This document shows, piece after piece, positions 1-55,071 of a stretch of 64,000 bases of DNA (positions are counted from its first letter, which is position 1; each line of letters begins with the position of its first letter). The notes beneath the pieces are model-generated. The model searched no databases. It had not been told where the DNA came from and saw only the letters and a program-made list of their open reading frames with translations. The DNA is taken from NCBI RefSeq assembly GCF_032191835.1, contig NC_083240.1:13454001-13518000 (forward strand), given 5' to 3'. This stretch comes from Heteronotia binoei (Eukaryota). Made by a program: the position numbers and the translations under genes.

Positions 1-939
1 CTAATTACAACCATGGCCGAAGCCCTCAACATTACTCTTCCGTCGGACTCACCTAAGGTCTCTGACCTTGTACACGACCTCGTGCAAACGGACTTTCCAC
101 CGGGCTCGCTTCTTCCCATGCTCCCGGTACACCTCGAAGGCCTCCGCGAAACCTGGGACAAACCTGCCTCGGTTCCACCTACCGCGAAACGCTTTGACTC
201 TCTCTACAGAGTTCACGCTCCTGAGGCTAAATTTCTTGCTTCTCATCCGGCGCCCAACTCCATTATCGTGCACTCAGCCACTAAGGCTAAACCATCCAGA
301 CATCCGACACCTCCTGACCGTGAAGGCAGGAAATTGGACACCCTGGCAAGAAAAATTTTCGGCCTTGCCTCTACAAATTCTAAACTAAACAATTATTTAG
401 CCTACTTTTCAGCCTATGTCTACAACTTGGCTATCCAATTTACGCCTCTTATTTCCGCCCTTCCTGAACCCTCCCAAAGAACGGCCTCCGGCTTGGTATC
501 AGAGCTATCTAGAGTGTCCAAGCAACAGATCAACACCATACGCCATGCTGTTTCTTGCTCGTCCAGGGTTTTTGCATCCTCTGTTGCCTTACGACGCCAC
601 GCCTGGCTGAGGTCCACAAATCTACAACCGGACATTAAACAAAAAATAGAAGACCTTCCCTTCGATGGCCTCGGCCTTTTCCATGCTTCTACTGACGAAG
701 TCTTAGCCTCGGTGGATGATGGCCGCAAACGTGCCAAGCGCTTGGGAGTTTCCCAACCGTTTTCCCAGCGTCCCAACCGTGCAAAGCCCTGGAGACCATC
801 ATTTCAAAGACGCCAAGGGTCACCTAAGCGTACCGACTTCTGGAAGAGGAAGACTGGCCAGCAGAAACCGCAGTTTCAACAAAGACCGCGGTCACAACAG
901 GCCAAAAAACCCTCCCTTCCTTCTAAACAGTCTCTTTGA
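1..939 (+). CDS. DIRS gag (ORF1), 3' part; LAP2alpha-like domain
   Basis: Frame open from base 1 (LITTMAEALN..., matching NLITTMASALN in copy 2) to TGA 937-939; RRHAWLRS..IEDLPFDG motif typical of vertebrate DIRS gag. Confidence 0.9.
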   Translation, partial: LITTMAEALNITLPSDSPKVSDLVHDLVQTDFPPGSLLPMLPVHLEGLRETWDKPASVPPTAKRFDSLYRVHAPEAKFLASHPAPNSIIVHSATKAKPSRHPTPPDREGRKLDTLARKIFGLASTNSKLNNYLAYFSAYVYNLAIQFTPLISALPEPSQRTASGLVSELSRVSKQQINTIRHAVSCSSRVFASSVALRRHAWLRSTNLQPDIKQKIEDLPFDGLGLFHASTDEVLASVDDGRKRAKRLGVSQPFSQRPNRAKPWRPSFQRRQGSPKRTDFWKRKTGQQKPQFQQRPRSQQAKKPSLPSKQSL

Positions 940-2815
940 CTCCCCCGTACCGTTCTTCAACACACGTCTGTCACCGTTCCTTCCGACTTGGAACTCGATA
1001 ACAACCGACTCCTGGGTGCTGACCATCGTGCGTCTAGGTTACGCAATCGAGTTCATTTCTCCACCTCGCCACCACTATTTCACAGCTACCCCCCCCTCTC
1101 CCCTCCTCCGTCAGGAGATCCTGGACTTGCTCCACAAGGAAGCCATAGAGCCCGTTCCCCCCCTCCATCGGGGGACAGGCTTCTATTCAAGATACTTCCT
1201 TGTTCCCAAGAGGGATGGAGGAAGGCGTCCCATTCTAGATCTAAGGAAGCTCAACAAGCACATCGCATACAGGAAGTTCAGAATGATCTCCCTGCAGTCC
1301 ATTCTGCCTCTTATCCCCAGGAATTCCTGGATGGCTTCCCTAGACCTTCAGGACGCTTACTTCCATGTGACAATCCGACCTCAACATCGGAAGTATCTAC
1401 GATTTGCCATGGGCCGGGACCACTACCAATATGTGTCCCTACCTTTCGGCCTCTCCACTGCGCCCCGCGTGTTCACCAAGTGCATGGCGGTTGTGGCAGC
1501 TGCACTTCGCACTCGGAACATTCCAGTCTTCCCGTACATCGACGACTGGCTCCTGGTGGCCCCGACACAACAGCAATTGGAGCACAACCTCGACACAGCT
1601 CTCACTCTTCTGAGCTCCCTGGGTCTCCGCGTGAATACATCAAAGTCGCACCTCACACCTACCCAGGACCTCAAGTTTATAGGCGCCCTTCTCTGCAGCT
1701 CCCTGCATCGAGCTTTTCTCCCAGAGGATCGGGCATGCACTATTATTGCCCTAGCCAAGGCAGTTCAACAGCAACCCCGTCAGTCTGCGTTCACAATCCA
1801 ACGCCTGCTGGGCCTTATGGCTGCAACGACATCTGTCCTTCGATTTGCCAGACTGCGAATGCGACAACTGCAGATCTGGTTTGTTCGAGCCTACAACCCT
1901 CAAACGCAACCGCAAGCTGCTCTGCTCACTATCCCACAGAGAGCGCTTCTATCTCTCACGTGGTGGACTGTGCCCAACAATCTACTAGAGGGCAAGCCGT
2001 TTCTACCGACTTCCCCTACGACCACTATAACAACAGATGCCTCCAAGTGGGGATGGGGAGCCCACCTAGAGGACAAAACTGTCAGAGGGCTTTGGACGAC
2101 CACCGAGAGACTCATGCACATAAACTGCTTAGAACTGATCGCGGTGCACAGAGCTCTTCAATCATTTCTCCCATTAATAAAGGGCCAGCATGTCCAGATC
2201 TCTACGGACAACATGGCGACTGTTTATTATATAAACAAGCAAGGGGGCACCAGATCCCTCCGTCTCTGTCGTATAGCCGTACTGCTCTGGGAATGGTGTG
2301 TCAAACACAACATATTTATGACTGCCATTCATCTCCCCGGTGTGGAGAATACCTTGGCCGATTCCCTCAGCAGGTTTCGGATAGACGACCACGAATGGTC
2401 CATCACTCCGACCTACCTTCGCAGCATCTTCCGCTGCTTCGGAACACCCGAGGTGGACGCCTTTGCATCCAGGAACAATGCCAAGTGTCCTCAGTTTTAT
2501 TGCAGGAGGGGCAACGACGCCTTTCTGCACGATTGGACAGGTCCCCTTCACTACTTCTTTCCACCGACCCCCCTTCTGACACGTGTGTTGGTGAAAATAA
2601 CTCGGGATGGCACAGACTGCATCCTCATTGCGCCATGGTGGCCTCGGCAACCGTGGTTCACGAGGCTGCTTCAACTGTCACGCCACACTTACTGCCGGCT
2701 TCCTCCTGCGGGCGACCTCCTCTCTCAAGCCAACGGTCAGGTTCTTCATCACAACCCTCGGGTCCTGGCCCTGACCGCCTGGAGAATACGGCCACCTTCC
2801 TCTCTACAGAAGTAG
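716..2815 (+). CDS. DIRS pol ORF: reverse transcriptase, RNase H, Dam-like methyltransferase domain
   Basis: LDLQDAYFH, LPFGLSTAPRVF, YIDD (RT); TDAS, LELIA, STDN, ADSLSR (RNase H); DAFAS..FFPP..APWWPRQPWF (MT). True start uncertain (ATG 716 or frameshift from gag). Confidence 0.93.
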   Translation: MMAANVPSAWEFPNRFPSVPTVQSPGDHHFKDAKGHLSVPTSGRGRLASRNRSFNKDRGHNRPKNPPFLLNSLFDSPVPFFNTRLSPFLPTWNSITTDSWVLTIVRLGYAIEFISPPRHHYFTATPPSPLLRQEILDLLHKEAIEPVPPLHRGTGFYSRYFLVPKRDGGRRPILDLRKLNKHIAYRKFRMISLQSILPLIPRNSWMASLDLQDAYFHVTIRPQHRKYLRFAMGRDHYQYVSLPFGLSTAPRVFTKCMAVVAAALRTRNIPVFPYIDDWLLVAPTQQQLEHNLDTALTLLSSLGLRVNTSKSHLTPTQDLKFIGALLCSSLHRAFLPEDRACTIIALAKAVQQQPRQSAFTIQRLLGLMAATTSVLRFARLRMRQLQIWFVRAYNPQTQPQAALLTIPQRALLSLTWWTVPNNLLEGKPFLPTSPTTTITTDASKWGWGAHLEDKTVRGLWTTTERLMHINCLELIAVHRALQSFLPLIKGQHVQISTDNMATVYYINKQGGTRSLRLCRIAVLLWEWCVKHNIFMTAIHLPGVENTLADSLSRFRIDDHEWSITPTYLRSIFRCFGTPEVDAFASRNNAKCPQFYCRRGNDAFLHDWTGPLHYFFPPTPLLTRVLVKITRDGTDCILIAPWWPRQPWFTRLLQLSRHTYCRLPPAGDLLSQANGQVLHHNPRVLALTAWRIRPPSSLQK

Positions 2816-3813
2816 CCAATGTCATCCTCAACGCAAGAAAGCCTTCCACCAGACTTTCTTATCAGCGTAAATGGAAGCGCTTCTGTTCCTTTGCAACATC
2901 TTCTCAGCTGCAGCCGGAAACGGCTCCACTTCCCCTAATTCTGGACTACCTACTTTCCCTACAGAAATCCGGACTCTGTTATTCCTCTGTGAAGGTTCAC
3001 CTTTCTGCGGTTTCTGCTTTCCACAAGCCGATCGATGGCAAGACTGTGTTCTCCCATCCCTTATCAAAGTCCTTTCTCAAGGGCTTGTTGCACCTCAACC
3101 CACCGGTTAAACCATTTGTTCCGACATGGAGTTTATCGTTAGTCCTTTCCTGCTTGATGAAAGCCCCTTTTGAGCCTATGGCTACCATAGACCTCAATCT
3201 CCTTTCCTGGAAGACAGCATTACTCGTAGCCCTCACCTCGGGCAAACGGGCAAGTGACTTATGCGCTTTCCGCTACGATCCTCCCTACACCATTTTCCAC
3301 AAGGACAAAGTTGTTTTGCGACCGGACCCTGCGTTCCTGCCTAAGGTTGTCTCCCAGTTCCACTTATCAACCTCAACTTCTCTACCAACGTTCTTCTCCA
3401 ACCCATCCGACCAGGGACAACGAGCCCTGCATTCCTTGGACGTTAGAAGGGCGTTATCCTTCTACCTTGATCGTACACAACCTTTCCGTAAGGACCCTAA
3501 TCTGTTTGTGGCCTACGGAAACCCCCACAGGGGTCTTAAGATTTCTACCCAACGTCTGTCAAAGTGGGTAGTCAGTGCCATCAGGTTGTGCTACGAACTG
3601 GCTAAACAGCCTTTGCCCGACGGCCTTAAGGGCCACTCTACTAGAGCGGTCTCCACGTCTTCGGCCTTTCTACAAGGCGTGTCTCTAGAGGACATTTGTG
3701 CGGCTGCATCCTGGTCCTCTCCATCCACGTTCGTCTCCCATTATGCGATGGACGTTCGTGCGAGACGTGACGCCTCCTTCGGCCAAGCGGTCCTCAGATC
3801 CATCTTCCTCTGA
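940..3813 (+). CDS. DIRS ORF3: long frame overlapping pol, ending in the tyrosine recombinase (YR domain about 2810-3813)
   Basis: No stop from the codon after the gag TGA to 3813; YR catalytic motifs SGKRASDL (R), GHSTR (HxxR), ASW, SHY (Y). Confidence 0.9.
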   Translation, partial: LPRTVLQHTSVTVPSDLELDNNRLLGADHRASRLRNRVHFSTSPPLFHSYPPLSPPPSGDPGLAPQGSHRARSPPPSGDRLLFKILPCSQEGWRKASHSRSKEAQQAHRIQEVQNDLPAVHSASYPQEFLDGFPRPSGRLLPCDNPTSTSEVSTICHGPGPLPICVPTFRPLHCAPRVHQVHGGCGSCTSHSEHSSLPVHRRLAPGGPDTTAIGAQPRHSSHSSELPGSPREYIKVAPHTYPGPQVYRRPSLQLPASSFSPRGSGMHYYCPSQGSSTATPSVCVHNPTPAGPYGCNDICPSICQTANATTADLVCSSLQPSNATASCSAHYPTESASISHVVDCAQQSTRGQAVSTDFPYDHYNNRCLQVGMGSPPRGQNCQRALDDHRETHAHKLLRTDRGAQSSSIISPINKGPACPDLYGQHGDCLLYKQARGHQIPPSLSYSRTALGMVCQTQHIYDCHSSPRCGEYLGRFPQQVSDRRPRMVHHSDLPSQHLPLLRNTRGGRLCIQEQCQVSSVLLQEGQRRLSARLDRSPSLLLSTDPPSDTCVGENNSGWHRLHPHCAMVASATVVHEAASTVTPHLLPASSCGRPPLSSQRSGSSSQPSGPGPDRLENTATFLSTEVANVILNARKPSTRLSYQRKWKRFCSFATSSQLQPETAPLPLILDYLLSLQKSGLCYSSVKVHLSAVSAFHKPIDGKTVFSHPLSKSFLKGLLHLNPPVKPFVPTWSLSLVLSCLMKAPFEPMATIDLNLLSWKTALLVALTSGKRASDLCAFRYDPPYTIFHKDKVVLRPDPAFLPKVVSQFHLSTSTSLPTFFSNPSDQGQRALHSLDVRRALSFYLDRTQPFRKDPNLFVAYGNPHRGLKISTQRLSKWVVSAIRLCYELAKQPLPDGLKGHSTRAVSTSSAFLQGVSLEDICAAASWSSPSTFVSHYAMDVRARRDASFGQAVLRSIFL

Positions 3814-3821
3814 AGCCAGGG

Positions 3822-3930
3822 GTGAGTGCATCCGCTTCCATCTTTACACTGCAGACCACGTCACATGATGGTTGATTGCGTGATTGCATGTGATTTGATT
3901 TTTCCTGTGACTAACCTTTTTCTTTACCAG
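3822..3930 (+). other. Putative spliceosomal intron in DIRS 3' UTR (109 nt)
   Basis: G|GTGAGT donor, TGACTAAC branch at 3908-3915, pyrimidine tract, CAG acceptor; same signals in copy 2. Confidence 0.7.
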
Positions 3931-3963
3931 CACCCTCCTCCAGTCCATCCAGCTGGCTAGTCA

Positions 3964-4059
3964 CCCATGTGTGGGACTGCACAGAGACCACGAAGAAGAT
4001 AAACAGGTTGCTTACCTGTAACTGATGATCTTCGAGTGGTCATCTGTGCAGTCACACAC
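3964..4059 (+). repeat. DIRS internal complementary region (ICR), copy 1
   Basis: Reverse complement of right end joined to left end; identical to ICR of copy 2. Confidence 0.93.
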
Positions 4060-4127
4060 GCCCACCCAGCCTTCCCCGCTGCTGGCCTCTTGTGATTCTT
4101 CCGTAAACTTATAGTGTCATTGCCGGC

Positions 4128-4347
4128 GGCGGCTGGAAGAAACTGAGTGGAAGGGGCGCTCTCCCCCCGCTCCAGGCATGCGCGGTCGCTGCCTGCTCCC
4201 CAGAGCGGGAGGAAAGCGCGCCAAAAGACGTTATAAACGAGCTATTGGAGCTCCGAGGAATGGATCCGTTGCCTGCGGCAAGACCCATGTGTGTGACTGC
4301 ACAGATGACCACTCGAAGATCATCAGTTACAGGTAAGCAACCTGTTT
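4128..4347 (+). repeat. DIRS right inverted terminal repeat, copy 1
   Basis: Near-identical to 53763-53983; last ~59 nt complementary to ICR 4001-4059. Confidence 0.93.
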
Positions 4348-8785: not shown

Positions 8786-11096
8786 TTTTTTTCTTTTTAA
8801 AATCAATTTATTATAATGTAGAGTATTTTAATATATTATCATTTGCTATTAGAAATTAATACACATACATTACATTTTCTCCACCCCCCCTTTTGGTGAC
8901 CCCCCGCAGTGCCAACCCCCTTTACAAACCTTTCCCTATTACTATTTTATTTAATTTGTTAAAAGGTAATAAACTCTTGTCTATTAAATAATCTTTCTTC
9001 ATGAAGAAAAAAAAACATTAAAAAGAAAAAACAACCATATTTATAATCCAGCTTCGTAGCAGTCCTTTTTAGTCATTCACAAAAAACCAAAAAGAATATA
9101 ATCCAATAGTGTCATTTTTTTACTATAATCCATATAAAGTTTCTTTAGAGATTAACCATTCTCAAAGATCGCCAAATATCCTTTAACCTGCCATTCTTTT
9201 TCAATATACTTTTGAAACTTTCCCCACTCATTTTTAAACTTCTCTAAATCTTTTTCTTTTAAGATTCTTGTAAGGTTGTTCATTTCACTCCAATGCATAA
9301 CTTTCATAGTCTATTCCCACATTTCTGGTAATTTGTCTTGTTTCCACTTTTGCGCATACAATGTCCGTGCAGTTGAAAGCATATACCAAATTATCGTTTT
9401 ATCTTGTTTTTGAAATGTTTCCATTTGTAATCCCAACAAAAAAATGTCTGGCGCCTTCTTAATATTATATCCCAAAACTTTCAAAATCTCTTGCTGAATC
9501 ATTTGCCAAAATTTTTTCACCTTTTCACAAGTCCACCACATATGTTTTTTACATTTCCAACACCTATCCGACACCTGATTGTTCATTTTTGCCAATTTCT
9601 TAGGTGTCAGGTACCACCTATATAACATTTTTAAGCAATTTTCTTTAATGTTATAACATGTAGATATTTTCATAGAGTTCTTCCATAAATGTTCCCATGA
9701 CTCCATCTGTATTTCTTTATTTATATTTATCGCCCATTTTATCATTTGTGATTTAACTACTTCATCTTCCGTAGACCATTTCAATAATAGTTTATATGTC
9801 TTTGAAATCAGCTTTTCATTTTCCCCAAACAGCACTCTCTCCAATTCTGTTTGTTCTTGTCTTATTACATAGTTCTTAATGTCCTGTTCAAGCAAACTCT
9901 TTATTTGTTGCAATTGGAACCAATTATTTTTATATTGTATTTCTTCAGCCCATTTTAATTCTACCTTTCCTCCTTGAATTTTTAAAAGTTGTTTATATGA
10001 TAGCCACTTCTTTTCTTTGATATCTGAATACAGTTTTTTTACTTCTGTTGGCACAATCCAAAGTGGTTTCCTCTCGTCCCCATATCTTTTATATTTCAAC
10101 CAAGTATTTAACAAATTACTTCTGATATAGTGATGTGAGAAGAAGCCGTCCATCTTATTTTTCCCATAGTACATATAAGCATGCCATCCAAAAATATTTC
10201 CATGACCTAATACTTGTAACTTTCTGTTTAATAATGTCATCCATTCCTTAATCCACACCAGCCATACTGCATCATGATACAGTTTTAAATTAGGCAGTTG
10301 AAATACGCCCCTTTCTTTCGCATCTGTCAGAATTTTCATTTTAATTTTTGGTTTTTTTCCAGCCCATACACATTCTAAAAGTTTCCTTTGCCATTTATTA
10401 AATTGTTTATTGTCTTTCACTATTGGAATTGTTTGAAACAGGAACATAATTCTCGGTAAGACATTCATCTTAATTGCAGAAATTCTTCCCAACATAGGCA
10501 GATTCAATTTGTTTGATTTTATCATATCTCCGTCGATCTTATGCCAAAGTTTCTCATAATTATTTTTATACAAATCAATATTTTTCATTGTTATTTCCAC
10601 CCCTAAGTATTTTACTTTGGAGGTAACTTCACATTCTGTTAACCTCTGTAGATCTCCCTGTTTGTCCTCTGACATATTTTTGCACATAATTTTTGATTTT
10701 TCTTTGTTGATATAAAAACCTGCCAATTCTCCATATTCTTGTATTTTACGAAGCAACAATGGTGTTACATGAGTGGGATTTTCATTTATAACCATCACAT
10801 CATCTGCAAATGCTCTATACTTATAAGAAAAACCTTTCACTTTCAGGCCCTCTATCTCATTATCTTCTTGGAGTTGCATTAACAAAACCTCTAAAGTCAT
10901 TATAAATATCAGTGGAGATAAAGGGCAACCTTGTCTAGTTCCTTTATTTATTTTCATTTTTTCCGTTAAGTCTGCATTAATACAGAGTCTTGCTGATTGC
11001 TCAGAATATATCGCTTTTACCATTCTTATAAAGTCATCTCCCAATCTCAATTTCTCCATCACTGCAAACATAAAATCCCAATGCACATTATAAAAA
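8786..11096 (-). mobile_element. 5'-truncated L1-clade LINE
   Basis: ORF2 RT motifs, A-rich tail at about 8786-8798, exact 15-bp TSD TTTTTATACACTCCT at 8771-8785 and 11097-11111. Confidence 0.92.
9311..11096 (-). pseudogene. L1 ORF2 fragment (RT C-terminal half plus C-terminal Cys motif)
   Basis: GTRQGCPLSP, FADD, KYLG, KMNVLPR, CWKC; the ORF-track portion upstream of 11096 is flank, not L1. Confidence 0.88.
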
Positions 11097-44921: not shown

Positions 44922-45165
44922 TCTCTATAGATTCAATCCAGGAGGTGTGCGAGGGCAAACAGTCGGAGATCTTCCAGCGCTACGCAGACGGCAGCTTCGA
45001 CCCCAACTGTTGCTTCAGCATCTACTATGGAGACCACATGGAGTCCCTGGACCTGGTCTCATCCAGCGGGGAAGAGGCTCGGACGTGGATCACAGGCCTC
45101 AAGTACCTGATGGCCGGCATCAGTGATGAAGACAGCCTGTCGAAAAGGCAGAGAACGAGAGACCA
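44922..45165 (+). CDS. PLCH2: PLCH2 exon, PH domain (ISIDSIQEVCEG...KRQRTRD[Q])
   Basis: CAG acceptor, in-frame join, U12-type donor GTATCCTT at 45166. Confidence 0.97.
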
Positions 45166-45343
45166 GTATCCTTCTTAGTGGGCGGGCGGGCAAAGCTGAA
45201 GCTACCCTGTCTTCTTAAAGCTCGTTTTGTTATTTTTTTAAAAACCATTTTTATTTAACAATTTATTGTCGTTTCACAACATAAACATGACAAAAAATAA
45301 AATAATATAGTACAGTGCAATAGTTACAAATTAATAGTAAGAC

Positions 45344-45525
45344 CAGGGCTTTTTTTGTAGTGAGAACTCCTTTGCATATTAGGCCACACCTCTCTTATGT
45401 AGACATTCATTCAAGAGCTTACAGGGCTCTTATTATAGGGCCTACTGTAAGCTCTTGGAGGACTGGCTACATCAGGGGTCTGTGGCCTAATATGCAAAGG
45501 AGTTCCTGCTACAAAAAAAGCCCTA
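45344..45525. mobile_element. Palindromic hAT-type MITE
   Basis: Family match. Confidence 0.85.
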
Positions 45526-45988
45526 AGATAGTAATAAAAATACAGCATTTTACCTAACATGTCTATTTTAAACATACTGGTAATTTTCAGTGTTTAAAAC
45601 GCACTTGTTTTGAACAATTTCTCTGAATAAAAAGCCTTTAGTCTAAGGATTTTGAAATCCAGTAAATTTACCATAAACAGAGTATATCAGTCGACTCAGG
45701 AATATCATATTTGAATAAATGTTCCATGAGCTCTTATGGGAAAGGGCAGAATACAAATCCACAGAAATAAATAATTAACAAACAAGCAAGCAAATAAATA
45801 AATAAATAAGTAAATTTATGGGGAATCAGATTGCCTCAAGACTGAATGAAAATTTTTGAGAAATAGAAAATGGTAAATTGTCAGAGAGTCTGGCCATAAT
45901 ATACATGTCCCGTAACCTTTTGTGCCATATTAATAAATCTGAGGGAGCTTTGACTTTCCAGCGTGAAGCTAAAGTTGATATCGCTGTG

Positions 45989-46457
45989 CAGGCCTCAGAT
46001 TCAGCAGGAGCTCTCAGGAGCACAGCTCCTGAGCCTTTCTGAGGGTTCCCCCTCCTCCTCCCCACCTACCTTGTCCATTGAATAGTAGGTGCAGCTGCAT
46101 AACAATCCCTGGATTAGGAGAGCGGGCAGGCAGCCAGCCACCAGGGCCTTTGCCACACACCCCAGCAGCCCTTATTAACCCCTGGAGAAGCCATATGCTA
46201 CCCTTTCTTCACTTCTTGTGTGATTTGGGGTGGTGGGTGGCTTGTTGACCTTTTGACTGGGGGGAGGGCGGCCCAGGAGAGCCCCAGATGAACAAGGTCT
46301 GCTTGGACTGGCTGGTTCTCTAGCCATCCCAAGCAGACCTCGCTTCCCCAGGGCTCTCTTTTCTTGCATCGGGTTGCTTTTGGCTGGGGGGGGGGAGCAT
46401 ATGCTAATGGTTATGCTAATGAGCCCTGCCACCTATTTTTCTACAAAACAACCCCTG
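45989..46457 (+). mobile_element. Non-autonomous hAT element (second copy)
   Basis: 8-bp TSD TCGCTGTG/TCACTGTG; aligns to 20021-20478. Confidence 0.85.
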
Positions 46458-47677
46458 TCACTGTGAATAAAAAAAATTGAGATAGCTTTAGCTGGAAATG
46501 AGAGGCAAGAATCAGACTTCCAACCATTGAGGAAAAGGTGGTCGAGCCCCCCCCCCTCCCCATTTTTACAATATTCCATCAGCAAAGCCTCAAATAATAG
46601 ATCTGGGATTGACTTAACTGTGGGTTTTTAATAGTCCGAGCAAGGGTTGGCGTGGTGCTTGCCAGAATGTCGGATGCTAAGCAAGGGCTGACTTCATAGA
46701 AGACAGCTTCATGGGCTCAGTTGGCAGGGTTTTGCACGCAGAAGGTTCCAGCTTTGATCCTTGCTAAACCGAGTAAGACCCCCTGCCTTAGATCTTGGAG
46801 AGGTGATGCAGTTCAGAATAATCCGTGCTGGTCCAGACGAACTCGTGGCTAGAAGCAGGTGGACGGTGGCAGGAAGGTGAGCTCCGTGTCTTCTCCTTCC
46901 AGTCCCAGAGGCAGTATGCCTCTTTAGATCAGTTGCCAGGGAACACAGGCAAGAAGATGCTGTCTCAGGTCACCTGCTCACGGGCTTCCTAGAAGCAGCT
47001 GGTCAGCCACTGTGTGAACAGAAGGCTGGATTTGATGGGCCTTGGGTCTGATCCAACAGGCTTTTCTTACACTCTTATGGAGGACTTTTTTTTTGTAGCA
47101 GGAACTCCTTTGCCTATTAGGCCACACCTCCCTGGTGTAGCCAATCCTCCAAGAGCTTACAGGGCTCTTAGTACAGGGGTGTAAGCTCCAGGAGGACTGG
47201 CTTCATCAGGGGTGTGTGGCTGTTGTGTATGCGGACTCATGGTTATGTTCCTTTACCAGCATTCCTGCCTGGCTCATTGGAGCCTTGAGGACTGAGCTTG
47301 GGGACTCTAGAACAATGGGCTGTAGGATCCAAAGCCCTACTGCCCTGGTCCAATCAGAAGCCCTCTGCTGGTTCAAACGATCCAATGCTGTTCTAGCATG
47401 GACTGTATATAGTTGGCCCCGTTGGCCCAGTTAGGCAGTCTTCTTTAGCTACTAGTTACCATGCTGTAACTCCAGTAAAGAGCTATGATCACTGCAGCCG
47501 CGTCTCCTCTGTGCATTGAACCCACTACATTATAGTGACCTAATATACAAAGGAGTTCCTGCTACAAAAAAAAAGCCCTGCTGTTATGCTTCGTTGCCCT
47601 TTTTCAGTGCCTGGATTGGGGTGCTTCCTGTAGCTGGGGGGGGGGGGGGAGGGGGATGCCATCCCAGCCACCTCTTG

Positions 47678-47875
47678 ATCTTCTTCGTGGTCTCTGTGCA
47701 GTCCCACACATGGGGTCTTGCCGCAGGCAACGGATCCGTACCTCGGAGCTCCAATAGCTCGTTTATAACGTCTTTTGGCGCGCTTTCCTCCCGCCCTGGG
47801 GAGCAGGCAGCGACTGCGCATGCCTGGAGCGGGGGGAGAGCGCCTATTCCACTCAGTTTCTTCCCTTCCGCCGCC
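47678..47875 (+). repeat. DIRS left ITR
   Basis: About 47707-47864 is the exact reverse complement of about 53770-53927; first ~37 nt complementary to ICR 53598-53634. Confidence 0.95.
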
Positions 47876-48097
47876 CGGACAACACCTACCTCGTTGCGTT
47901 CCTCCTCTGGCTCGTCTCTTGGTATCGTACTACTCCTCCCTTTTCTTCACTATTTACTCTATTTTTTCCTTCTTCGTCCCATTAATATAAAAAAAAAAAA
48001 AAAAAAGGTTACCCGATTCTGCGCTTCAGCCTTTTTTCTTTCTACCCCCCCCCCCTCTTCTCGTCTCTCCCTTCCCTCCTTCCCCTGTCCGGAACGA

Positions 48098-50614
48098 ATG
48101 GAAGGGAAAATCACCTTTAAAAGGTGCAGGCAGTGTGGTTCTAAAATTCCGTCCTCGGACGGTCATTCACTCTGCCTTTTTTGCTTGGGGGAATCCCACA
48201 GAACCGATAACTGCCACCACTGTGCTTGCTTCGGCAAGCAGGCGCGCAAGAACAGAGCAGCCCGCCTTCGTAGTTTCCTCATGGAATCCTCTCTACGCGC
48301 AGTGTCTACTTCAGATCCGCCGCCTCCCCCACTGAGAGCGGGAGATTCGGCAACTTCGGCCCTTCCTACCGTACCTAGGAAGCATAAGTCCGATAAAAAG
48401 GCTTCTAAGCACTCTGAGGGTCACAAGGCGCCCAAACAGACTCGTCATGGCGAATCCAGCCTGTCGAAGCCACACCACTCGGGCCCGAAAACCTCCAGCC
48501 CGACCACTTCGGCGCCTAAGAAGCATCACGACCCGTCGGCTTCTACCTCCGTGCATACTTCCGCCTTTGCTACGGCTGCGCAATCGTCCGCATCGACCGC
48601 CCAAACGGCCTCCGCGCAATCGAATCCGATTCTACCTATTGAACTCTCGGCTCCTTCCGATGTTATCTCGGAAATGCCTCGCCTCACTCAACCCTCTATC
48701 GAAGTGATTCCGATTGGCTCGAGATCGCCCTCGGTTCACAGCCTTCCTCCTGATGATATCCTCGACACCGAGGCTCCACTTCTCGGACCCGAATCCTTCC
48801 TCGACGTCACAACGCCAGTGCAGAAGGACATTACGACTCCATTGCTTAAAGACACGGCAGCACCACTGCTAAAGGAGTCCTCGACACAAGTTTCCTCTCA
48901 TCGGCTCCGACCTGGATCCCCACGGGCCCGCTCTCGCTTGCGGTCTCCGCTTCGTCCGAGATCTCCGTTCAGAGATCGTCCCTACTCTCCGCATCGATCT
49001 CCGCGTCGTCACGACTACCAGGACCCTCGCCGTGATCGCTCCCGGTCCCGGTATGGTGACTACCTCCGTGACTACCCACGAGACCGTTCTCCTTCTCGGT
49101 CTCCATCACCTCGACTTCACTCGCGCTACCATCGGTACCTGCGTTCACCATCGCACCACAGCTATAGGCATCTCTCCGACTTCGATCCCGAGCCTCTCCC
49201 CAGAGATGTTTATATGCCTCGACTCAGGGATTATTATTCACCCGGAACCCGCGACTACTACCGTTCACGCGACCAACGATCTCCTTATTACCGCCACCTG
49301 TCACCAGATTGCTACGATGATTACCAACACTACTACTCTCCCCGAGAAGAACCAAACCCTCGCACCCGAGATGATGCGGCAGCCCTTCGGACCCGAGACG
49401 TCTTCGACTCCCAGACTGCACCTGTGCAGCCTCCCGTGATTCCTCGAAACCGAGATTCTTCCAGAACAGCATCCGCATCGGTTTCCAAGCCACCGGCTTC
49501 GCCACTCAAGCGTCCCCGGGACCCTTCACCTGTTGAACCCAAGTCTCCACAACGTCCCCTCTCGGCTTCGGATAGAGACACTTCTGATCATTCCGACTCC
49601 GAGGAGGCCCCTGCCTCACCCTCATCCGACCAGCCTCCTAGGCTTTCACCATCCGACAGTTCTAAGGCCTACCTGAATCTCATTACAACCATGGCTTCCG
49701 CACTAAACATCCCTATGTCCTCCGACTCACCAAAAGTTTCGGACGTGGTCCACGACCTAGTCCGCGCAGATTTTCCAGATAGCTCCACGCTTCCTATGCT
49801 CCCTGTACACCTTGAAGGCCTCCAGGAAGCCTGGGAGAAGCCGGCTTCGATCCCTACACTTTCTCGCCGCCTGGATTCTCTTTATAGGGTGCACGTAGCT
49901 GACTGCAAATTCCTCGCATCTCACCCGGCACCCAACTCTGTCGTGGTTCATTCCGCCACCAAGACCAAACAATCTCGCCACCCCGTTCCTCCGGACCGGG
50001 AGGGTCGAAAATTGGACACTCTGGCTAAGAAAATCTACAGTTTTTCTTCAACCAACTCCAAGTTGAACAATTATTTAGCCTACTTTGCGGCTTACTCCTT
50101 CAACTTGGCTAACCAGATTACCCCTCATATTGCATCCATGCCTGACTCATCTCAGAAGACTGTGTCGTCTCTCGTCTCTGAGCTCTCCCGTGTCAATAAA
50201 CAACAAATCAACTCTATCCGCCATGCGGTCTCCTGTTCTTCTCGAATTTTTGCAACTTCGGTGGCTTTACGTCGCCACGCCTGGCTGCGCTCTACCAACT
50301 TGCAGCCGGACATCAAACAGCGTATAGAAGACCTTCCCTTCGACGGTCTGGGACTCTTCCATGCGTCCACGGACGAGGTCCTTGCATCCGTCGATGACGG
50401 CCGCAAAAGAGCCAAACGACTTGGTGTCACACAACCAACCTCACTGCCCTCTAATAGGCAGAGACCGTGGAAGCCATCCTTCCAACGCCGCCAGCGGTCT
50501 CCCAAGTCTCAAGATTTCTGGAAAAGGAAACCTCTCCCAAAGCAACCTTTTCATCAGAGGCCACGGGCCCAACCTTCTAAGAAACAATCTCAGACAGGCA
50601 AGCAGTCTCTTTGA
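48098..50614 (+). CDS. DIRS gag (838 aa): N-terminal Cys/His zinc finger, RS/RP-rich low-complexity middle, LAP2alpha-like C-terminus
   Basis: ATG 48098; Cx2Cx9Hx2Cx2Cx4Hx4Cx2C; aligns with copy 1 gag. Confidence 0.9.
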   Translation: MEGKITFKRCRQCGSKIPSSDGHSLCLFCLGESHRTDNCHHCACFGKQARKNRAARLRSFLMESSLRAVSTSDPPPPPLRAGDSATSALPTVPRKHKSDKKASKHSEGHKAPKQTRHGESSLSKPHHSGPKTSSPTTSAPKKHHDPSASTSVHTSAFATAAQSSASTAQTASAQSNPILPIELSAPSDVISEMPRLTQPSIEVIPIGSRSPSVHSLPPDDILDTEAPLLGPESFLDVTTPVQKDITTPLLKDTAAPLLKESSTQVSSHRLRPGSPRARSRLRSPLRPRSPFRDRPYSPHRSPRRHDYQDPRRDRSRSRYGDYLRDYPRDRSPSRSPSPRLHSRYHRYLRSPSHHSYRHLSDFDPEPLPRDVYMPRLRDYYSPGTRDYYRSRDQRSPYYRHLSPDCYDDYQHYYSPREEPNPRTRDDAAALRTRDVFDSQTAPVQPPVIPRNRDSSRTASASVSKPPASPLKRPRDPSPVEPKSPQRPLSASDRDTSDHSDSEEAPASPSSDQPPRLSPSDSSKAYLNLITTMASALNIPMSSDSPKVSDVVHDLVRADFPDSSTLPMLPVHLEGLQEAWEKPASIPTLSRRLDSLYRVHVADCKFLASHPAPNSVVVHSATKTKQSRHPVPPDREGRKLDTLAKKIYSFSSTNSKLNNYLAYFAAYSFNLANQITPHIASMPDSSQKTVSSLVSELSRVNKQQINSIRHAVSCSSRIFATSVALRRHAWLRSTNLQPDIKQRIEDLPFDGLGLFHASTDEVLASVDDGRKRAKRLGVTQPTSLPSNRQRPWKPSFQRRQRSPKSQDFWKRKPLPKQPFHQRPRAQPSKKQSQTGKQSL

Positions 50615-52484
50615 CTCCCCCATCAGGCATACCAGACTATCCCCTTTTTACCCGAGTTGGAGTTCCATCACCACCGACTCTTGGGTCCTCACCATCGTGC
50701 GTCTAGGTTACGCAATAGAGTTCGTTTCGCCACCACACCACCACCACTTCATAGCCACACCTCCATCTGCTCTCTTGCAGCAGGAAATTCTGGACTTGCT
50801 CCAGAAGAATGCCATAGAACCCGTTCCTCCTCAACATCGAGGCACGGGATTCTACTCAAGATACTTCCTGGTCCCCAAACGCGATGGAGGAAAGCGCCCT
50901 ATCCTAGATCTTCGGAAGCTGAACAATTTCATCGAATGCAGGAAGTTCAGAATGATCTCCCTACACACCATCCTGCCTCTTATTCCCAGGAACTCCTGGA
51001 TGGCTTCCCTAGATCTTCAGGACGCTTACTTCCACGTGACTATCCGACCTCATCATCGGAAGTATTTAAGATTCGCTATGGGGCAAGACCACTTCCAGTA
51101 CGTATCCCTGCCCTTTGGCCTCTCCACCGCACCAAGGGTATTCACCAAGTGTATGGCGGTGGTGGCAGCGGCTCTCAGACTCCGAGACATCACAGTCTTC
51201 CCATATATAGACGACTGGCTTCTCATAGCACCGACTCAGCATCGTTTGCAGACCAATATCAGCACAACGCTCTCCCTCCTCGATTCCCTGGGCCTTCGTG
51301 TGAACACATCCAAATCCCATCTCGAGCCCACGCAGGACATCAAGTTTATAGGAGCTCTCCTTCGCACCTCTCTTCACCGTGCTTTCCTTCCAGAGGATCG
51401 AGCAATCACCATCATCACCTTAGCCAGGTCAATTCAACGACAGCCCTGCCAGTCTGCATTCACAATACAACGCCTGCTGGGCCTCATGGCCGCCACGACT
51501 TCTGTCATCCACTTTGCCAAGCTACGGATGCGACATCTACAGCTCTGGTTTGTGAGAGCCTACCATCCTCTGTTGCAACCGCAGAGCACCCTACTCACGG
51601 TTCCCCAGAGAGCTCTCTCATCCCTTACCTGGTGGACGGTACCCAGCAATCTTCTCGCGGGCATGCCGTTCCTACCGATGCCTCCAGTAGCTGTTGTGAC
51701 AACAGATGCCTCAAAGTGGGGATGGGGAGCCCACTTACAGGACAAGACCGTCAGAGGCCTTTGGACGCCCTCCGAGAGGGCCATGCACATAAACTGCTTA
51801 GAACTGATTGCCGTACACAGGGCCCTCTTATCCTTTCTTCCCCTGATCAACGGGAGCCATGTCCAGATCTCAACGGACAACATGGCAACTGTCTATTACA
51901 TCAACAAGCAAGGGGGAACCAAGTCTCTCAGACTTTGCCGTATAGCCATCGTGCTCTGGGAATGGTGTCTGGAGCACAACATCCATTTGACCGCCGTTCA
52001 CCTCCCAGGCGTAGACAATGTTCTGGCCGACTCTCTGAGCAGGTTTCGTCTGGACGACCACGAGTGGTCCCTCAATCCAACCTACCTCCGACGCATTTTC
52101 AGATGCTTCGGAACACCCATGGTGGATGCCTTTGCTTCACGGGACAATGCCAAATGCCCACGCTATTTCTCCAGAAGGGAGAACGACGCCTTCCTACACA
52201 GATGGACGGGCCCCCTCCACTACATCTTCCCACCAACCCCCCTACTGACTCGGGTTCTGACGAAGATCACACGAGACGGCACGGACTGCATCCTGGTAGC
52301 CCCCTGGTGGCCACGGCAACCATGGTTTACGAGACTTCTCCAGTTATCTCATCACACCTACCGTCGCCTTCCTCTCGTGAGCGACCTCTTGTCCCAAGCC
52401 AATGGTCAGATATTGCACCACAATCCTCAAGTACTGGCCCTAACGGCCTGGAGAATTCGACCTCCCACCTCTCCGCAGAGGTAG
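50394..52484 (+). CDS. DIRS pol ORF: RT, RNase H, MT
   Basis: Same intact motifs as copy 1; ATG 50394 is homologous to ATG 716 (frame also open from 50361); true start uncertain. Confidence 0.92.
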   Translation: MTAAKEPNDLVSHNQPHCPLIGRDRGSHPSNAASGLPSLKISGKGNLSQSNLFIRGHGPNLLRNNLRQASSLFDSPIRHTRLSPFYPSWSSITTDSWVLTIVRLGYAIEFVSPPHHHHFIATPPSALLQQEILDLLQKNAIEPVPPQHRGTGFYSRYFLVPKRDGGKRPILDLRKLNNFIECRKFRMISLHTILPLIPRNSWMASLDLQDAYFHVTIRPHHRKYLRFAMGQDHFQYVSLPFGLSTAPRVFTKCMAVVAAALRLRDITVFPYIDDWLLIAPTQHRLQTNISTTLSLLDSLGLRVNTSKSHLEPTQDIKFIGALLRTSLHRAFLPEDRAITIITLARSIQRQPCQSAFTIQRLLGLMAATTSVIHFAKLRMRHLQLWFVRAYHPLLQPQSTLLTVPQRALSSLTWWTVPSNLLAGMPFLPMPPVAVVTTDASKWGWGAHLQDKTVRGLWTPSERAMHINCLELIAVHRALLSFLPLINGSHVQISTDNMATVYYINKQGGTKSLRLCRIAIVLWEWCLEHNIHLTAVHLPGVDNVLADSLSRFRLDDHEWSLNPTYLRRIFRCFGTPMVDAFASRDNAKCPRYFSRRENDAFLHRWTGPLHYIFPPTPLLTRVLTKITRDGTDCILVAPWWPRQPWFTRLLQLSHHTYRRLPLVSDLLSQANGQILHHNPQVLALTAWRIRPPTSPQR

Positions 52485-53482
52485 CCCACGTTATTCTAAA
52501 CGCTAGGAAGCCCTCCACAAGGCTTTCGTACCAAAGGAAATGGAAACGCTTCTGTTCATTCGCGACTGCTAACCATCTACTCCCAGAATCAGTACCTCTC
52601 AATATGATCCTGGAGTATTTACTTTCCCTACAGAAATCAGGACTCTGTTACTCATCCTTGAAAGTTCATCTCTCTGCCATCTCTGCGTTCCACAACCCGG
52701 TAGACGGCAAAACAGTTTTTTCTCATTCCTTGTCCAAGTCTTTTCTCAAGGGCATGTTGCACCTCAATCCACCCGTTAAACCCCTTGTCCCAACTTGGAG
52801 TTTATCCCTAGTTCTTTCCTCGCTTATGAAAGCACCATTTGAACCTATGGCTACCATAGACCTCAGTCTCCTCTCCTGGAAGACAGCATTGCTGATTGCC
52901 CTTACCTCTGGAAAACGGGCAAGTGACTTATGCGCCTTCCGCCACGACCCTCCCTACACCATTTTTCACAAGGAAAAGGTTGTCCTCAGACCGGACCCTG
53001 CGTTCCTTCCTAAGGTTGTCTCCCAGTTCCACTTATCGACTGCGACCTCTCTGCCGACCTTTTTTCCAAACCCAACAGATCACGGACAACGGGCCCTGCA
53101 TTCGCTGGATGCAAGAAGGGCTTTATCCTTCTACCTTGATCGTACACGGCCTTTCCGTAAGGACCCTAATCTATTTGTGGCATACGGAAACCCCTGCAGG
53201 GGACTCAAAATCTCTACCCAGAGACTATCTAAATGGGTAGTTAGCGCCATTAGGCTGTGCTACGAACTGGCTAAGCAGCCTCTGCCCGAAGGCCTTAAGG
53301 CTCACTCTACCAGAGCGGTCTCGACGTCTTCGGCTTTTTTGCACGGCGTCTCCCTAGAGGACATCTGTGCTGCTGCATCGTGGTCCTCTCCCTCCACGTT
53401 CGTCTCCCATTATGCGTTGGACGTTCGTGCAAGACGTGACGCCTCCTTCGGCCAAGCGGTCCTCAGATCCATCTTTCACTGA
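50615..53482 (+). CDS. DIRS ORF3 / tyrosine recombinase
   Basis: Open from the codon after the gag TGA; R, AHSTR, W, Y catalytic residues intact. Confidence 0.9.
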   Translation, partial: LPHQAYQTIPFLPELEFHHHRLLGPHHRASRLRNRVRFATTPPPLHSHTSICSLAAGNSGLAPEECHRTRSSSTSRHGILLKILPGPQTRWRKAPYPRSSEAEQFHRMQEVQNDLPTHHPASYSQELLDGFPRSSGRLLPRDYPTSSSEVFKIRYGARPLPVRIPALWPLHRTKGIHQVYGGGGSGSQTPRHHSLPIYRRLASHSTDSASFADQYQHNALPPRFPGPSCEHIQIPSRAHAGHQVYRSSPSHLSSPCFPSRGSSNHHHHLSQVNSTTALPVCIHNTTPAGPHGRHDFCHPLCQATDATSTALVCESLPSSVATAEHPTHGSPESSLIPYLVDGTQQSSRGHAVPTDASSSCCDNRCLKVGMGSPLTGQDRQRPLDALREGHAHKLLRTDCRTQGPLILSSPDQREPCPDLNGQHGNCLLHQQARGNQVSQTLPYSHRALGMVSGAQHPFDRRSPPRRRQCSGRLSEQVSSGRPRVVPQSNLPPTHFQMLRNTHGGCLCFTGQCQMPTLFLQKGERRLPTQMDGPPPLHLPTNPPTDSGSDEDHTRRHGLHPGSPLVATATMVYETSPVISSHLPSPSSRERPLVPSQWSDIAPQSSSTGPNGLENSTSHLSAEVAHVILNARKPSTRLSYQRKWKRFCSFATANHLLPESVPLNMILEYLLSLQKSGLCYSSLKVHLSAISAFHNPVDGKTVFSHSLSKSFLKGMLHLNPPVKPLVPTWSLSLVLSSLMKAPFEPMATIDLSLLSWKTALLIALTSGKRASDLCAFRHDPPYTIFHKEKVVLRPDPAFLPKVVSQFHLSTATSLPTFFPNPTDHGQRALHSLDARRALSFYLDRTRPFRKDPNLFVAYGNPCRGLKISTQRLSKWVVSAIRLCYELAKQPLPEGLKAHSTRAVSTSSAFLHGVSLEDICAAASWSSPSTFVSHYALDVRARRDASFGQAVLRSIFH

Positions 53483-53488
53483 AATGGG

Positions 53489-53564
53489 GTGAGTGTATCC
53501 GCTTATGTCTCTATGTCATACAATCTTTGCCTTAGGCCATGTGACTAACCTTTTTCTTCTCCAG
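53489..53564 (+). other. Putative spliceosomal intron in DIRS 3' UTR (76 nt)
   Basis: G|GTGAGT, TGACTAAC at 53542-53549, pyrimidine tract, CAG. Confidence 0.7.
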
Positions 53565-53597
53565 CACCCTCCTCCAGGACACTTAGCTGGCTAGTCA

Positions 53598-53693
53598 CCC
53601 ATGTGTGGGACTGCACAGAGACCACGAAGAAGATAAACAGGTTGCTTACCTGTAACTGATGATCTTCGAGTGGTCATCTGTGCAGTCACACAC
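53598..53693 (+). repeat. DIRS ICR, copy 2
   Basis: Complementary to both element ends; junction at 53634/53635. Confidence 0.95.
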
Positions 53694-53762
53694 GCCCACC
53701 CAGCCTTCCCCGCTGCTGGCTTTTGGTACTTCTTGTCTTACCTTTTTAGTCTCTCTGCCAGT

Positions 53763-53983
53763 GGCGGCTGGAAGAAACTGAGTGGAATAGGCGCTCTCCC
53801 CCCGCTCCAGGCATGCGCAGTCGCTGCCTGCTCCCCAGGGCGGGAGGAAAGCGCGCCAAAAGACGTTATAAACGAGCTATTGGAGCTCCGAGGTACGGAT
53901 CCGTTGCCTGCGGCAAGACCCCATGTGTGTGACTGCACAGATGACCACTCGAAGATCATCAGTTACAGGTAAGCAACCTGTTT
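53763..53983 (+). repeat. DIRS right ITR with terminal extension
   Basis: Inverted match to left ITR. Confidence 0.95.
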
Positions 53984-54014
53984 TTCTCTCTCCTTTCCTT
54001 GACTCCCCCTACAT

Positions 54015-54144
54015 GTGGTTGAAGCAAACCTTCGACGAGGCAGATAAAAACGGCGATGGCAGCCTGAGCATCAACGAAGTTCTCCAGCTGATGCACAAAC
54101 TGAACGTCAACCTGCCCCGGCAGAAGGTCAAGCAGATGTTCAAG
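54015..54144 (+). CDS. PLCH2: PLCH2 exon, first EF-hand (QWLKQTFDEADKNGDGSLSINEVLQLMHKLNVNLPRQKVKQMFK)
   Basis: DKNGDGSLSINE EF loop; AAG|GTGAGG donor; later exons not found in the window. Confidence 0.96.
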
Positions 54145-54859
54145 GTGAGGCGCAGGCCGTGTCTTAATGAGAAGGCGGCAGGCGGCATTCCAGGATGACC
54201 AACCGTGGTAGAAAGCAATCCCAGACAGCTTGCTTTCCTGCTCCCTTCTCCCCGTGGGTCCGTGTCATGCATTTCCAGGCACTGTTCCTAACACCAGATG
54301 CTGTCGGTTTCATGTTTTTCTATAAAGCAGTGCTCCCTGTTGAGTCTGGTTAGTTTCTAGAACTGCTGCACAGTCTTGCCTGCTGTGAAATGCTGAGAAG
54401 TTCAAGCAGTGGAGTCACTTCTTTTAACGCTTCTGTCTGTTAAACGCTCCTTGCAAGCAGAAAACCAGCCCAGCAGGTGAAGTGCAGGCCTAGAATCTTT
54501 CAATGTGCTGCCGTTTTTCTCGCAGAGAAAGTTTTTACTTGCAAGATAAAAAAAAAATGATATCTTCTGCCTACGGCAGGTAGTCTGGTCTACTATCTCA
54601 GGAGTCTACTGGGTCATTCCTACCTCATTCTGAGGCATATGTAGACCTAGGATGAATAATACCCTAGGTCAAGGGTGGCCATGTTGTGGCTTGACAGCCA
54701 CATGTGGCTCTTTCACACGTATTATGTGGCTCTTGAAGCTCCACTTCCCTATCGGCCAGCTTGGAGAGAGCATTTGTCTTTTTAAATCACTTCTCCAAGC
54801 CAAGCCAGCCAGCAGTTAGGAAAATGCATTTAAAGTCAAAGTTGCCTTCTTTTCACCTC

Positions 54860-55071
54860 NNNNNNNNNNNNNNNNNNNNNNNNNNNNNNNNNNNNNNNNN
54901 NNNNNNNNNNNNNNNNNNNNNNNNNNNNNNNNNNNNNNNNNNNNNNNNNNNNNNNNNNNNNNNNNNNNNNNNNNNNNNNNNNNNNNNNNNNNNNNNNNNN
55001 NNNNNNNNNNNNNNNNNNNNNNNNNNNNNNNNNNNNNNNNNNNNNNNNNNNNNNNNNNNNNNNNNNNNNNN
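54860..55071. other. Assembly gap or masked run (N) inside a hAT MITE (about 54670-55150)
   Basis: N run. Confidence 1.

What the first reader, a model, noticed from the sequence alone, without database searches (positions are those of the whole stretch)
53965..54020. 6.3-kb DIRS inserted 11 nt upstream of the U12 branch site of PLCH2
Seen: the element ends at 53983 and the branch motif TTCCTTGAC starts at 53995. The reconstructed empty site is ...CAGCCACCTCTTG|TTCTCTCTCCTTTCCTTGACTCCCCCTACAT|exon. The element makes up 6306 of 8849 intron bases, and its ITR core matches perfectly, so the insertion is recent. It also moved a long G run (47636-47655) from about 50 nt to more than 6 kb from the branch site. 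Established: U12 3' recognition depends on the branch sequence and not on an upstream pyrimidine tract. Inference: the minor-intron architecture lets such a close, sense-oriented insertion be tolerated. It may still lower PLCH2 output and could be polymorphic.
Basis: partly seen in the sequence, partly recalled or inferred. Interest (0 to 1): 0.7.

Follow-up and report, generated by a model that had tools for sequence, protein, structure and literature searches.

The report
Jumping gene beside minor-intron branch site
An intact 6.3-kb DIRS retrotransposon sits 11 bases upstream of the branch signal of a conserved minor-spliceosome intron in a gecko's PLCH2 gene and is absent from another gecko, but nobody has yet tested whether splicing tolerates it, so it is a well-documented curiosity and not a discovery.

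Summary
A DIRS1-like element occupies 47678-53983 on the + strand, the same sense as the gene. It has 172-nt inverted terminal repeats. Its 96-nt internal complementary region (53598-53693) matches both termini 96/96, which fixes the ends. It fills 6306 of the 8849 bases of intron 45166-54014. The intron carries minor-spliceosome signals: donor GTATCCTTC, and branch TTCCTTGAC at 53995-54003, 12 nt from an unusual AT 3' end.

The orthologous Gekko kuhli intron is 1523 nt with the same donor, branch and AT end. It has no element and keeps a G-run about 32 nt before the branch. The orthologous PLCH2 intron is catalogued as minor in human and mouse.

Not supported:
- Repeat identity is not a clock in DIRS, although terminus/ICR identity and open ORFs do suggest the element is young.
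- "Tolerated because U12" is a plausible inference only.

No reads from this species were available, so acceptor use and polymorphism are untested.

Caveats are the sense orientation and a predicted 59-bp RNA stem that ends 11 nt before the branch.

Side lead: three squamate DIRS copies share a left-flank motif, which hints at target-site preference.

The scan had already noted the GT..AT intron (s1-330293), on this same window.

The parts
44922..45165 (+). PLCH2 exon upstream of the intron (end of the PH domain); ends ..GAGACCA
   Evidence: Pfam PH_12 1.6e-07; 83% identical to Gekko kuhli L001 7992-8512
45166..45174 (+). U12-type donor GTATCCTTC
   Evidence: The same donor is in G. kuhli. ATATCCTTT sits at the same exon edge in L002-L005. 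Human and mouse PLCH2 are listed as CCA|ATATCCTT
45166..54014 (+). Host intron, 8849 nt, GT..AT ends; 2543 nt without the element
47636..47655 (+). G-run (14 G, A, 5 G), now 6.3 kb from the branch site
   Evidence: G. kuhli has a 9-G run at the same place, about 32 nt before its branch motif
47668..47677 (+). 10 nt of left flank (CCACCTCTTG) resembling the element's own right end and the left flanks of two other squamate DIRS copies
   Evidence: no internal template in the element
47678..53983 (+). DIRS1-like tyrosine-recombinase retrotransposon, 6306 nt, same sense as the gene
47693..47864 (+). Left inverted terminal repeat
   Evidence: 172 nt, 99% complementary to 53770-53941
48098..50614 (+). 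gag-like ORF (838 aa from the first ATG), no Pfam hit
50361..52484 (+). ORF with reverse transcriptase, RNase H and a Dam-like methyltransferase (weak hit)
   Evidence: RVT_1 2e-22, RT_RNaseH 1.5e-07, Dam 4e-04 below cut-off
52469..53482 (+). Tyrosine recombinase part of the third ORF (frame open from 50657)
   Evidence: Phage_int_SAM_1 1.8e-04; 54-57% identical to reptile proteins that sources name Tyr recombinase domain-containing
53598..53693 (+). Internal complementary region: complement of the left end abutting complement of the right end
   Evidence: 96/96
53770..53941 (+). Right inverted terminal repeat
53960..53983 (+). Right extension, the last 24 nt with no counterpart at the left end; holds a donor-like CAGGTAAG at 53966
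53984..53994 (+). 11 host bases (pyrimidines) between the element and the branch motif
53995..54003 (+). U12 branch motif TTCCTTGAC; A54002 lies 12 nt from the intron end
   Evidence: identical in G. kuhli; TCCTTAAC in L002-L006
54013..54014 (+). Intron 3' terminal AT
   Evidence: the frame CA|G TGG requires it; no AG or in-frame AC is available
54015..54144 (+). PLCH2 exon with the first EF-hand
   Evidence: EF-hand_7 2e-08; 98% identical to a G. kuhli model that NCBI names eta-2
1..4347 (+). Second, diverged DIRS copy cut by the window start; same right end and ICR

Best explanation
A DIRS1-like retrotransposon integrated, through its tyrosine recombinase and a circular intermediate, into the conserved U12-type (GT..AT) intron of a gecko PLCH2 gene. 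This happened after the split from the Gekko kuhli lineage. It landed in a pyrimidine-rich stretch 11 nt upstream of the branch motif (14 nt if the terminal TTT is assigned to the host), in the gene's sense.

Shown: the element, its exact ends, its open ORFs, the empty ortholog, and the fact that the donor, the branch motif, the 12-nt branch-to-end spacing and the AT end are all unchanged relative to the element-free ortholog.

Inferred: the minor spliceosome recognises the donor and branch sequence cooperatively and needs no upstream pyrimidine tract. The roughly 20 nt it reads at the 3' end are intact, so the intron can probably still be removed, perhaps less efficiently.

Also inferred: the site was probably picked because it resembles the recombinase's preferred sequence, so closeness to the branch need not reflect selection.
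For: Anatomy and ends.

Empty orthologous site: in G. kuhli the donor is at L001 8480 and the intron ends at 10002 (1523 nt). It has the same branch motif and the same AT end, and its sequence is contiguous across the insertion point.

Minor-intron identity: the signals sit exactly at the exon edges and are conserved in six other loci. PLCH2 and PLCH1 are listed with minor introns after the same CCA in human and mouse (PMC6717393 supplement). The consensus is RUAUCCUU / UCCUURAY, and many U12 introns lack a pyrimidine tract (PMC10853781).

Youth: 96/96 terminus-ICR identity and about 5.3 kb of open ORFs.

Site preference: the flanks match the circle junction at 15/24 positions, a level reached by 0.03% of host positions. 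Three squamate copies share a left-flank motif. Right flanks of most copies start with TT.
Against: - No RNA evidence that the 54015 acceptor is used in the allele carrying the element. The run search returned no run of this species.
- Sense-oriented intronic retroelements are often harmful, and transposable elements (TEs) are depleted next to splice sites (PMC3446317).
- The pre-mRNA is predicted to form a perfect 59-bp stem (right half of the ICR paired with the right terminus) ending 11 nt before the branch motif, z = -15. This could hinder binding of the branch-site complex.
- If the insertion is very recent, or is a single-individual allele, its presence says nothing about tolerance.
- The site-preference idea rests on 3 of 6 copies and was chosen post hoc. 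The Pogona and turtle copies do not show the full motif.
Confidence: 0.75

Rival explanations
1. The position is explained by where the recombinase likes to integrate and not by what the minor intron tolerates. The element targets strand-specific, pyrimidine-rich pseudo-sites that resemble its own circle junction. Such sites are common just upstream of 3' splice sites on the sense strand. This partly overlaps the best explanation.
For: - The left flank matches the element's right end at 9/12 positions, and the two flanks together match the circle junction at 15/24 (p about 3e-4 against host positions).
- The left flanks of the window, Eublepharis and Varanus copies agree at 8, 6 and 7 of 10 positions (Monte Carlo p about 1e-5).
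- TG precedes the left end in 5 of 6 copies.
- Right flanks begin with TT in both window copies, in Eublepharis, in one of the two Pogona copies (L017) and in most loose ends of two other organisms. The Varanus and the other Pogona copy do not.
- The G. kuhli empty site keeps CCTCT..TG at the same place, so the motif is host sequence.
- The literature proposes recombination at a 3-bp junction sequence and says the specificity is untested (PMC3266345, PMC7192593).
Against: - Small sample, and the motif was found post hoc.
- Pogona L017 and the turtle copy lack it.
- The motif could be a left extension carried by the element, although no internal template exists.
Confidence: 0.35
2. The insertion is a recent, mildly or strongly harmful allele that lowers PLCH2 output. 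The possible mechanisms are intron retention, a dsRNA stem beside the branch site, or premature processing inside a sense-oriented element. It persists only because it is young or heterozygous.
For: - Sense orientation, with the only AATAAA at 50195.
- A 59-bp perfect stem is predicted to end 11 nt from the branch motif.
- The intron has grown to 3.5 times its former length, while orthologs are 186-1523 nt.
- TEs are depleted at splice sites and sense insertions are selected against.
- The element is young.
Against: - All recognised U12 signals and spacings are intact and identical to the element-free ortholog.
- No conserved sequence upstream of the branch is shared beyond geckos.
- Other young DIRS copies in introns are noted across this genome (unchecked notes).
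Confidence: 0.3
3. Assembly artefact: a DIRS copy was placed into the intron by mis-joining repeats.
For: DIRS is multi-copy in this genome. No reads of this species were available to check the junctions.
Against: Both junctions are clean. The two flanks align head to tail on one contiguous G. kuhli sequence. The element is complete, with both unique-flank junctions inside one intron. There is no N-run nearby; the nearest is 54860.
Confidence: 0.04

Closest known systems
DIRS1-like retrotransposons of vertebrates (for example the Anolis and Xenopus families; Piednoel et al. 2011, PMC3266345)
   Same: Inverted terminal repeats with a conserved inner part and divergent outer parts. A right extension. 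Two abutting ICRs complementary to both ends. gag, RT/RNase H/methyltransferase and tyrosine recombinase ORFs. No target duplication. A T-rich junction trinucleotide (AAA in the ICR, as in XtDIRS3).
   Different: The recombinase is only 54-57% identical to the nearest proteins on record. The base before the left end is G where the junction has T. A longer left-flank motif is shared with two other squamate copies.
Catalogued minor intron of human and mouse PLCH2 (Olthof et al. 2019, PMC6717393 supplement)
   Same: The same exon edge (..CCA|), a U12-type donor and branch motif, and the same position between the PH and EF-hand parts.
   Different: The mammalian intron starts AT and is 186-205 nt long. 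The gecko intron starts GT, ends AT, and is 1523 nt in G. kuhli and 8849 nt here.
Exclusion of TEs from the neighbourhood of splice sites, and bias against sense-oriented intronic retroelements (Nellaker et al. 2012, PMC3446317)
   Same: This is the general rule against which the insertion stands out: it ends 31 nt from an acceptor and lies in sense.
   Different: The rule was measured on mouse introns overall, which are almost all of the major type. No comparable measurement for minor introns was found.
Other notes of this scan on TEs in minor introns of the same genome (s1-341918, solo LTR 81 nt from the DDX54 U12 donor; s1-345566, TTC23L minor intron half filled with TEs)
   Same: A TE close to, or filling, a U12-type intron in this gecko.
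   Different: These are unchecked first-reader notes on other loci, and none places a TE this close to a branch site.

Membership tests
DIRS1-like retrotransposon (order DIRS) | Inverted terminal repeats | tested here: met
   172 nt, 99% complementary; the outer parts diverge, as described for the family
DIRS1-like retrotransposon (order DIRS) | Internal complementary region matching both termini side by side | tested here: met
   96/96
DIRS1-like retrotransposon (order DIRS) | Tyrosine recombinase in place of an integrase | tested here: met
   SAM-like N-terminal integrase domain, 22.1 bits against a cut-off of 22.3; strong homology (E 1e-111 to 1e-60) to reptile, amphibian and fish proteins named Tyr recombinase domain-containing
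DIRS1-like retrotransposon (order DIRS) | RT, RNase H and methyltransferase-like domain in one ORF | tested here: met
   RVT_1 and RT_RNaseH are above their cut-offs; Dam is below its cut-off (20.5 against 28.1)
DIRS1-like retrotransposon (order DIRS) | No target-site duplication | tested here: met
   The flanks ..CTCTTG and TTCTCT.. are not duplicated, and G. kuhli has one contiguous copy
U12-type (minor) intron | Donor RTATCCTT at the exon edge | tested here: met
   GTATCCTTC at 45166
U12-type (minor) intron | Branch motif TCCTTRAY about 10-15 nt from the 3' end | tested here: met
   TTCCTTGAC, with the A 12 nt from the end
U12-type (minor) intron | Terminal dinucleotides AT-AC or GT-AG | tested here: not met
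   The ends are GT..AT, with AT-AT in L002-L005. Rare non-canonical ends are accepted for U12 introns (PMC7367187 Table 2), so this does not exclude membership
U12-type (minor) intron | Orthology to an intron already classed as minor | tested here: met
   Human and mouse PLCH2 and PLCH1 entries have donors after the same CCA
U12-type (minor) intron | Removal depends on U11/U12 snRNPs | not testable with these tools
   Needs RNA from this species or a minigene

The most novel reading that the evidence does not exclude
Squamate DIRS recombinases integrate at strand-specific pseudo-sites (about CA[A/C]CT[C/T][T/C]TG followed by TT) that mimic the pyrimidine-rich sense strand at intron 3' ends. 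New copies would then be drawn, in sense, to the region just upstream of acceptors. Only those beside minor-type branch sites, which need no upstream pyrimidine tract, would survive. This locus would be the first worked example.
Probability: 0.15. Interest if true: 0.55.

Novelty: new member of a known kind. Interest (0 to 1): 0.3.

Why it matters
If carriers splice PLCH2 normally, this is a natural experiment. It would show that a minor intron accepts 6.3 kb of foreign, highly structured, sense-oriented sequence from 12 nt upstream of its branch motif. That would put a tight natural limit on how much sequence the U11/U12 complex needs at the 3' end.

If carriers splice poorly, it is an example of a young retrotransposon damaging a neuronal signalling gene.

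The flank motif, if confirmed genome-wide, would give the first sequence definition of a target site for a vertebrate DIRS recombinase. The specificity of these enzymes is described in the literature as untested (PMC7192593).

As it stands, this is one locus without RNA data.

Tried and rejected
1. Reads. The single run search on 53940-54850 returned only runs holding 4-10% of the words. Laying four of them showed that they are other organisms. They carry the 60-70-nt DIRS terminus/ICR motif and a repeat at 54675-54859, but have zero depth on the unique intron. One RNA run showed only a handful of reads on the exon. This gave no test of acceptor use, junction support or polymorphism.

3. Literature. 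No paper pairs PLCH2 with minor introns in its main text; the gene lists are in a supplement. No paper was found on TE insertions next to U12 branch sites.

4. Close relatives of this DIRS family. The nearest recombinase and RT proteins on record are 52-57% identical, so no further copies of the same family could be fetched for flank statistics. Three ENA/Logan contigs of another family were too short to have flanks.

5. I considered that the left-flank motif is part of the element. No template for it exists inside the element, and G. kuhli keeps a similar string at the empty site, so host origin is favoured but not proven.

6. I considered simple crossover models with a shared AT or TGTT core. 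Neither reproduces both junctions.

7. Steps left out. I did not search a joined exon model; exons were searched one by one by reference. The N-runs were left alone.

Full report
**What is there**

Reading 47400-48000 and 53700-54300 and running the repeat finder shows a pair of 172-nt inverted repeats, 47693-47864 and 53770-53941, 99% complementary. It also shows a 96-nt internal stretch, 53598-53693. Its first 37 nt are the exact complement of 47678-47714 and its last 59 nt are the exact complement of 53925-53983, with nothing in between (96/96). This is the internal complementary region (ICR) that defines DIRS1-like elements, and it fixes both ends to the base: 47678 and 53983, 6306 nt.

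Three long ORFs on the + strand fill the interior:
- a gag-like ORF ending at 50614, with no Pfam hit;
- an ORF at 50361-52484 with reverse transcriptase, RNase H and a weak Dam-like methyltransferase hit;
- an ORF ending at 53482 with an integrase SAM-like domain. Its nearest relatives are 54-57% identical and come from Varanus, Eublepharis, Anolis, turtles, amphibians and fish. Several are named tyrosine-recombinase proteins by their sources.

No target duplication flanks the element.

**The host gene and intron**

The exon ending at 45165 encodes the end of a PH domain, and the exon 54015-54144 encodes an EF-hand. The latter is 98% identical to a Gekko kuhli model that NCBI names phospholipase C eta-2.

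The frame requires CA|G TGG, so the intron is 45166-54014 (8849 nt). It starts GTATCCTTC and ends in AT. TTCCTTGAC lies at 53995-54003, with its A 12 nt from the intron end.

Each motif alone occurs about as often as chance allows in 64 kb. The evidence lies in their exact placement at the exon edges and in conservation:
- G. kuhli has the same donor, branch motif, spacing and AT end.
- Five contigs of unidentified vertebrates have TCCTTAAC and an AT end at the same exon edge, and the four of them that reach the upstream exon also have ATATCCTTT.
- The MIDB supplement lists PLCH2 and PLCH1 of human and mouse as minor-intron genes, with donors after the same CCA and PLCH2 introns of 205 and 186 nt (PMC6717393).

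The published consensus is RUAUCCUU and UCCUURAY, and many such introns lack a pyrimidine tract (PMC10853781).

**The numbers of the finding**

The element ends at 53983. Eleven host bases follow before the branch motif, and the exon starts 31 nt after the element. The element makes up 6306 of 8849 intron bases. The G-run at 47636-47655 is there.

In the 3-bp junction convention of Piednoel et al. (PMC3266345), the left TTG and the right TTT are the junction trinucleotide, one from the host and one from the element. This leaves a 3-nt ambiguity (11 or 14 host bases) but gives the same empty site.

**The empty site**

A word search with the translated exon and its neighbourhood found ORF fragments in many assemblies. 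The one from G. kuhli led to 20 kb of its chromosome. There the intron runs from L001 8480 to 10002 (1523 nt) and contains no DIRS.

The window's left flank and right flank align head to tail on one contiguous stretch, with a 9-G run about 32 nt before the branch motif. Identity in the alignable flanking stretches, each of which also spans an exon, is about 83%.

The window's genome is therefore a gecko that is not very close to G. kuhli.

**Age**

In the accepted model each repeat is copied from its own template, and only the outermost ends are rebuilt from the ICR (PMC7192593, PMC3266345).

The rebuilt ends do give a clock: 0 differences in 96 compared positions, together with about 5.3 kb of open reading frame. 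With an assumed neutral rate near 1e-9 per site per year (my assumption), both give only an upper bound in the order of 15 million years. Absence from G. kuhli gives a looser bound. "Young" is reasonable, but "recent" in the population sense is unproven.

**Is it tolerated?**

Nothing here tests that. The four runs laid hold only the DIRS terminus/ICR motif and another repeat, with no depth on the unique intron.

In favour of tolerance:
- Every recognised signal is intact and identical to the element-free ortholog.
- No sequence upstream of the branch is conserved beyond geckos.

Against tolerance:
- The element is in sense.
- TEs are generally depleted next to splice sites, and sense insertions are selected against (PMC3446317).
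- The transcript is predicted to form a perfect 59-bp stem between the right half of the ICR and the right terminus. The stem ends 11 nt before the branch motif (MFE -236 kcal/mol, z = -15). This is the region that branch-site complexes contact, a point that rests on established knowledge of SF3b and was not tested here.

**Why there?**

The flanks resemble the element's own circle junction at 15 of 24 positions, a level reached by 17 of 52,452 host positions in the window.

Full-length copies fetched from Eublepharis, Varanus, Pogona (two copies) and a turtle have the same build. Their flanks compare as follows:
- The 10 nt before the left end in the window, Eublepharis and Varanus copies agree at 8, 6 and 7 positions (Monte Carlo p about 1e-5, post hoc).
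- TG precedes the left end in 5 of 6 copies.
- Right flanks start with TT in both window copies, in Eublepharis, in one of the two Pogona copies (L017) and in most loose ends from the two other organisms.

The G. kuhli empty site keeps a similar string at the same place, and the element holds no template for it. I therefore read it as target preference for a strand-specific, pyrimidine-rich pseudo-site. That alone could explain both the sense orientation and the closeness to the branch motif. The sample is small, and one Pogona copy and the turtle copy do not fit.

**Verdict**

It is a new instance of known things, with a modest lead on DIRS target choice.

Noticed in passing
window 45166-54014; L001 8480-10002; L002-L006: The PLCH2 minor intron ends in AT and not AC wherever it was seen. 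It is GT..AT in both geckos and AT..AT in four contigs of unidentified vertebrates (L002-L005; L006 shows only the AT end); mammals are listed with AT donors. The first base changed from A to G in the gecko lineage while the 3' AT stayed.
   Followed up: partly
window 47668-47677; L007 4603-4612; L008 2751-2760: Three independent squamate DIRS copies share a roughly 9-nt motif just outside the ICR-defined left end (CA[A/C]CT[C/T][T/C]TG). TG precedes the left end in 5 of 6 reptile copies. It is either a target preference or an untemplated left extension.
   Followed up: partly
window 53966-53973 and its complement in the ICR, 53645-53652: A consensus major-type donor string, CAG|GTAAG, sits in the right extension. 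It is kept in Varanus, Pogona (GTAAGT), Eublepharis and the turtle (GTGAG), although the recombinases are only about 50% identical.
   Followed up: no
window 53590-54030: In the predicted RNA fold, the left half of the ICR (CCCATGTGTGGG) also pairs with the host acceptor region (CCCCCTACATGTGG). The minimum-energy structure therefore buries the branch motif and the intron end. This is probably a chance complementarity.
   Followed up: no
L001 1-10327 (Gekko kuhli, GCA_051903775.1): The deposited annotation splits PLCH2 into two gene models exactly at this intron (169 aa and 68 aa, the latter starting MWLKQ and running into intron sequence). The likely reason is that a GT..AT intron is not modelled.
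   Followed up: no
window 48756-48763: A U12-like donor string, ATATCCTC, lies in sense inside the DIRS gag ORF. No U12 branch motif occurs inside the element.
   Followed up: no
window 54675-54859: A repeat next to the masked run at 54860-55071 is present at very high depth in the DNA and RNA runs of two other organisms. It was not classified.
   Followed up: no
window 53984: Most reads of other organisms show A where the window has T, and then continue as the left end of the element. These are ICR (circle-junction) sequences that map onto the right terminus. They show that the 60-nt terminus/ICR motif is far more conserved across species than the rest of the element.
   Followed up: partly
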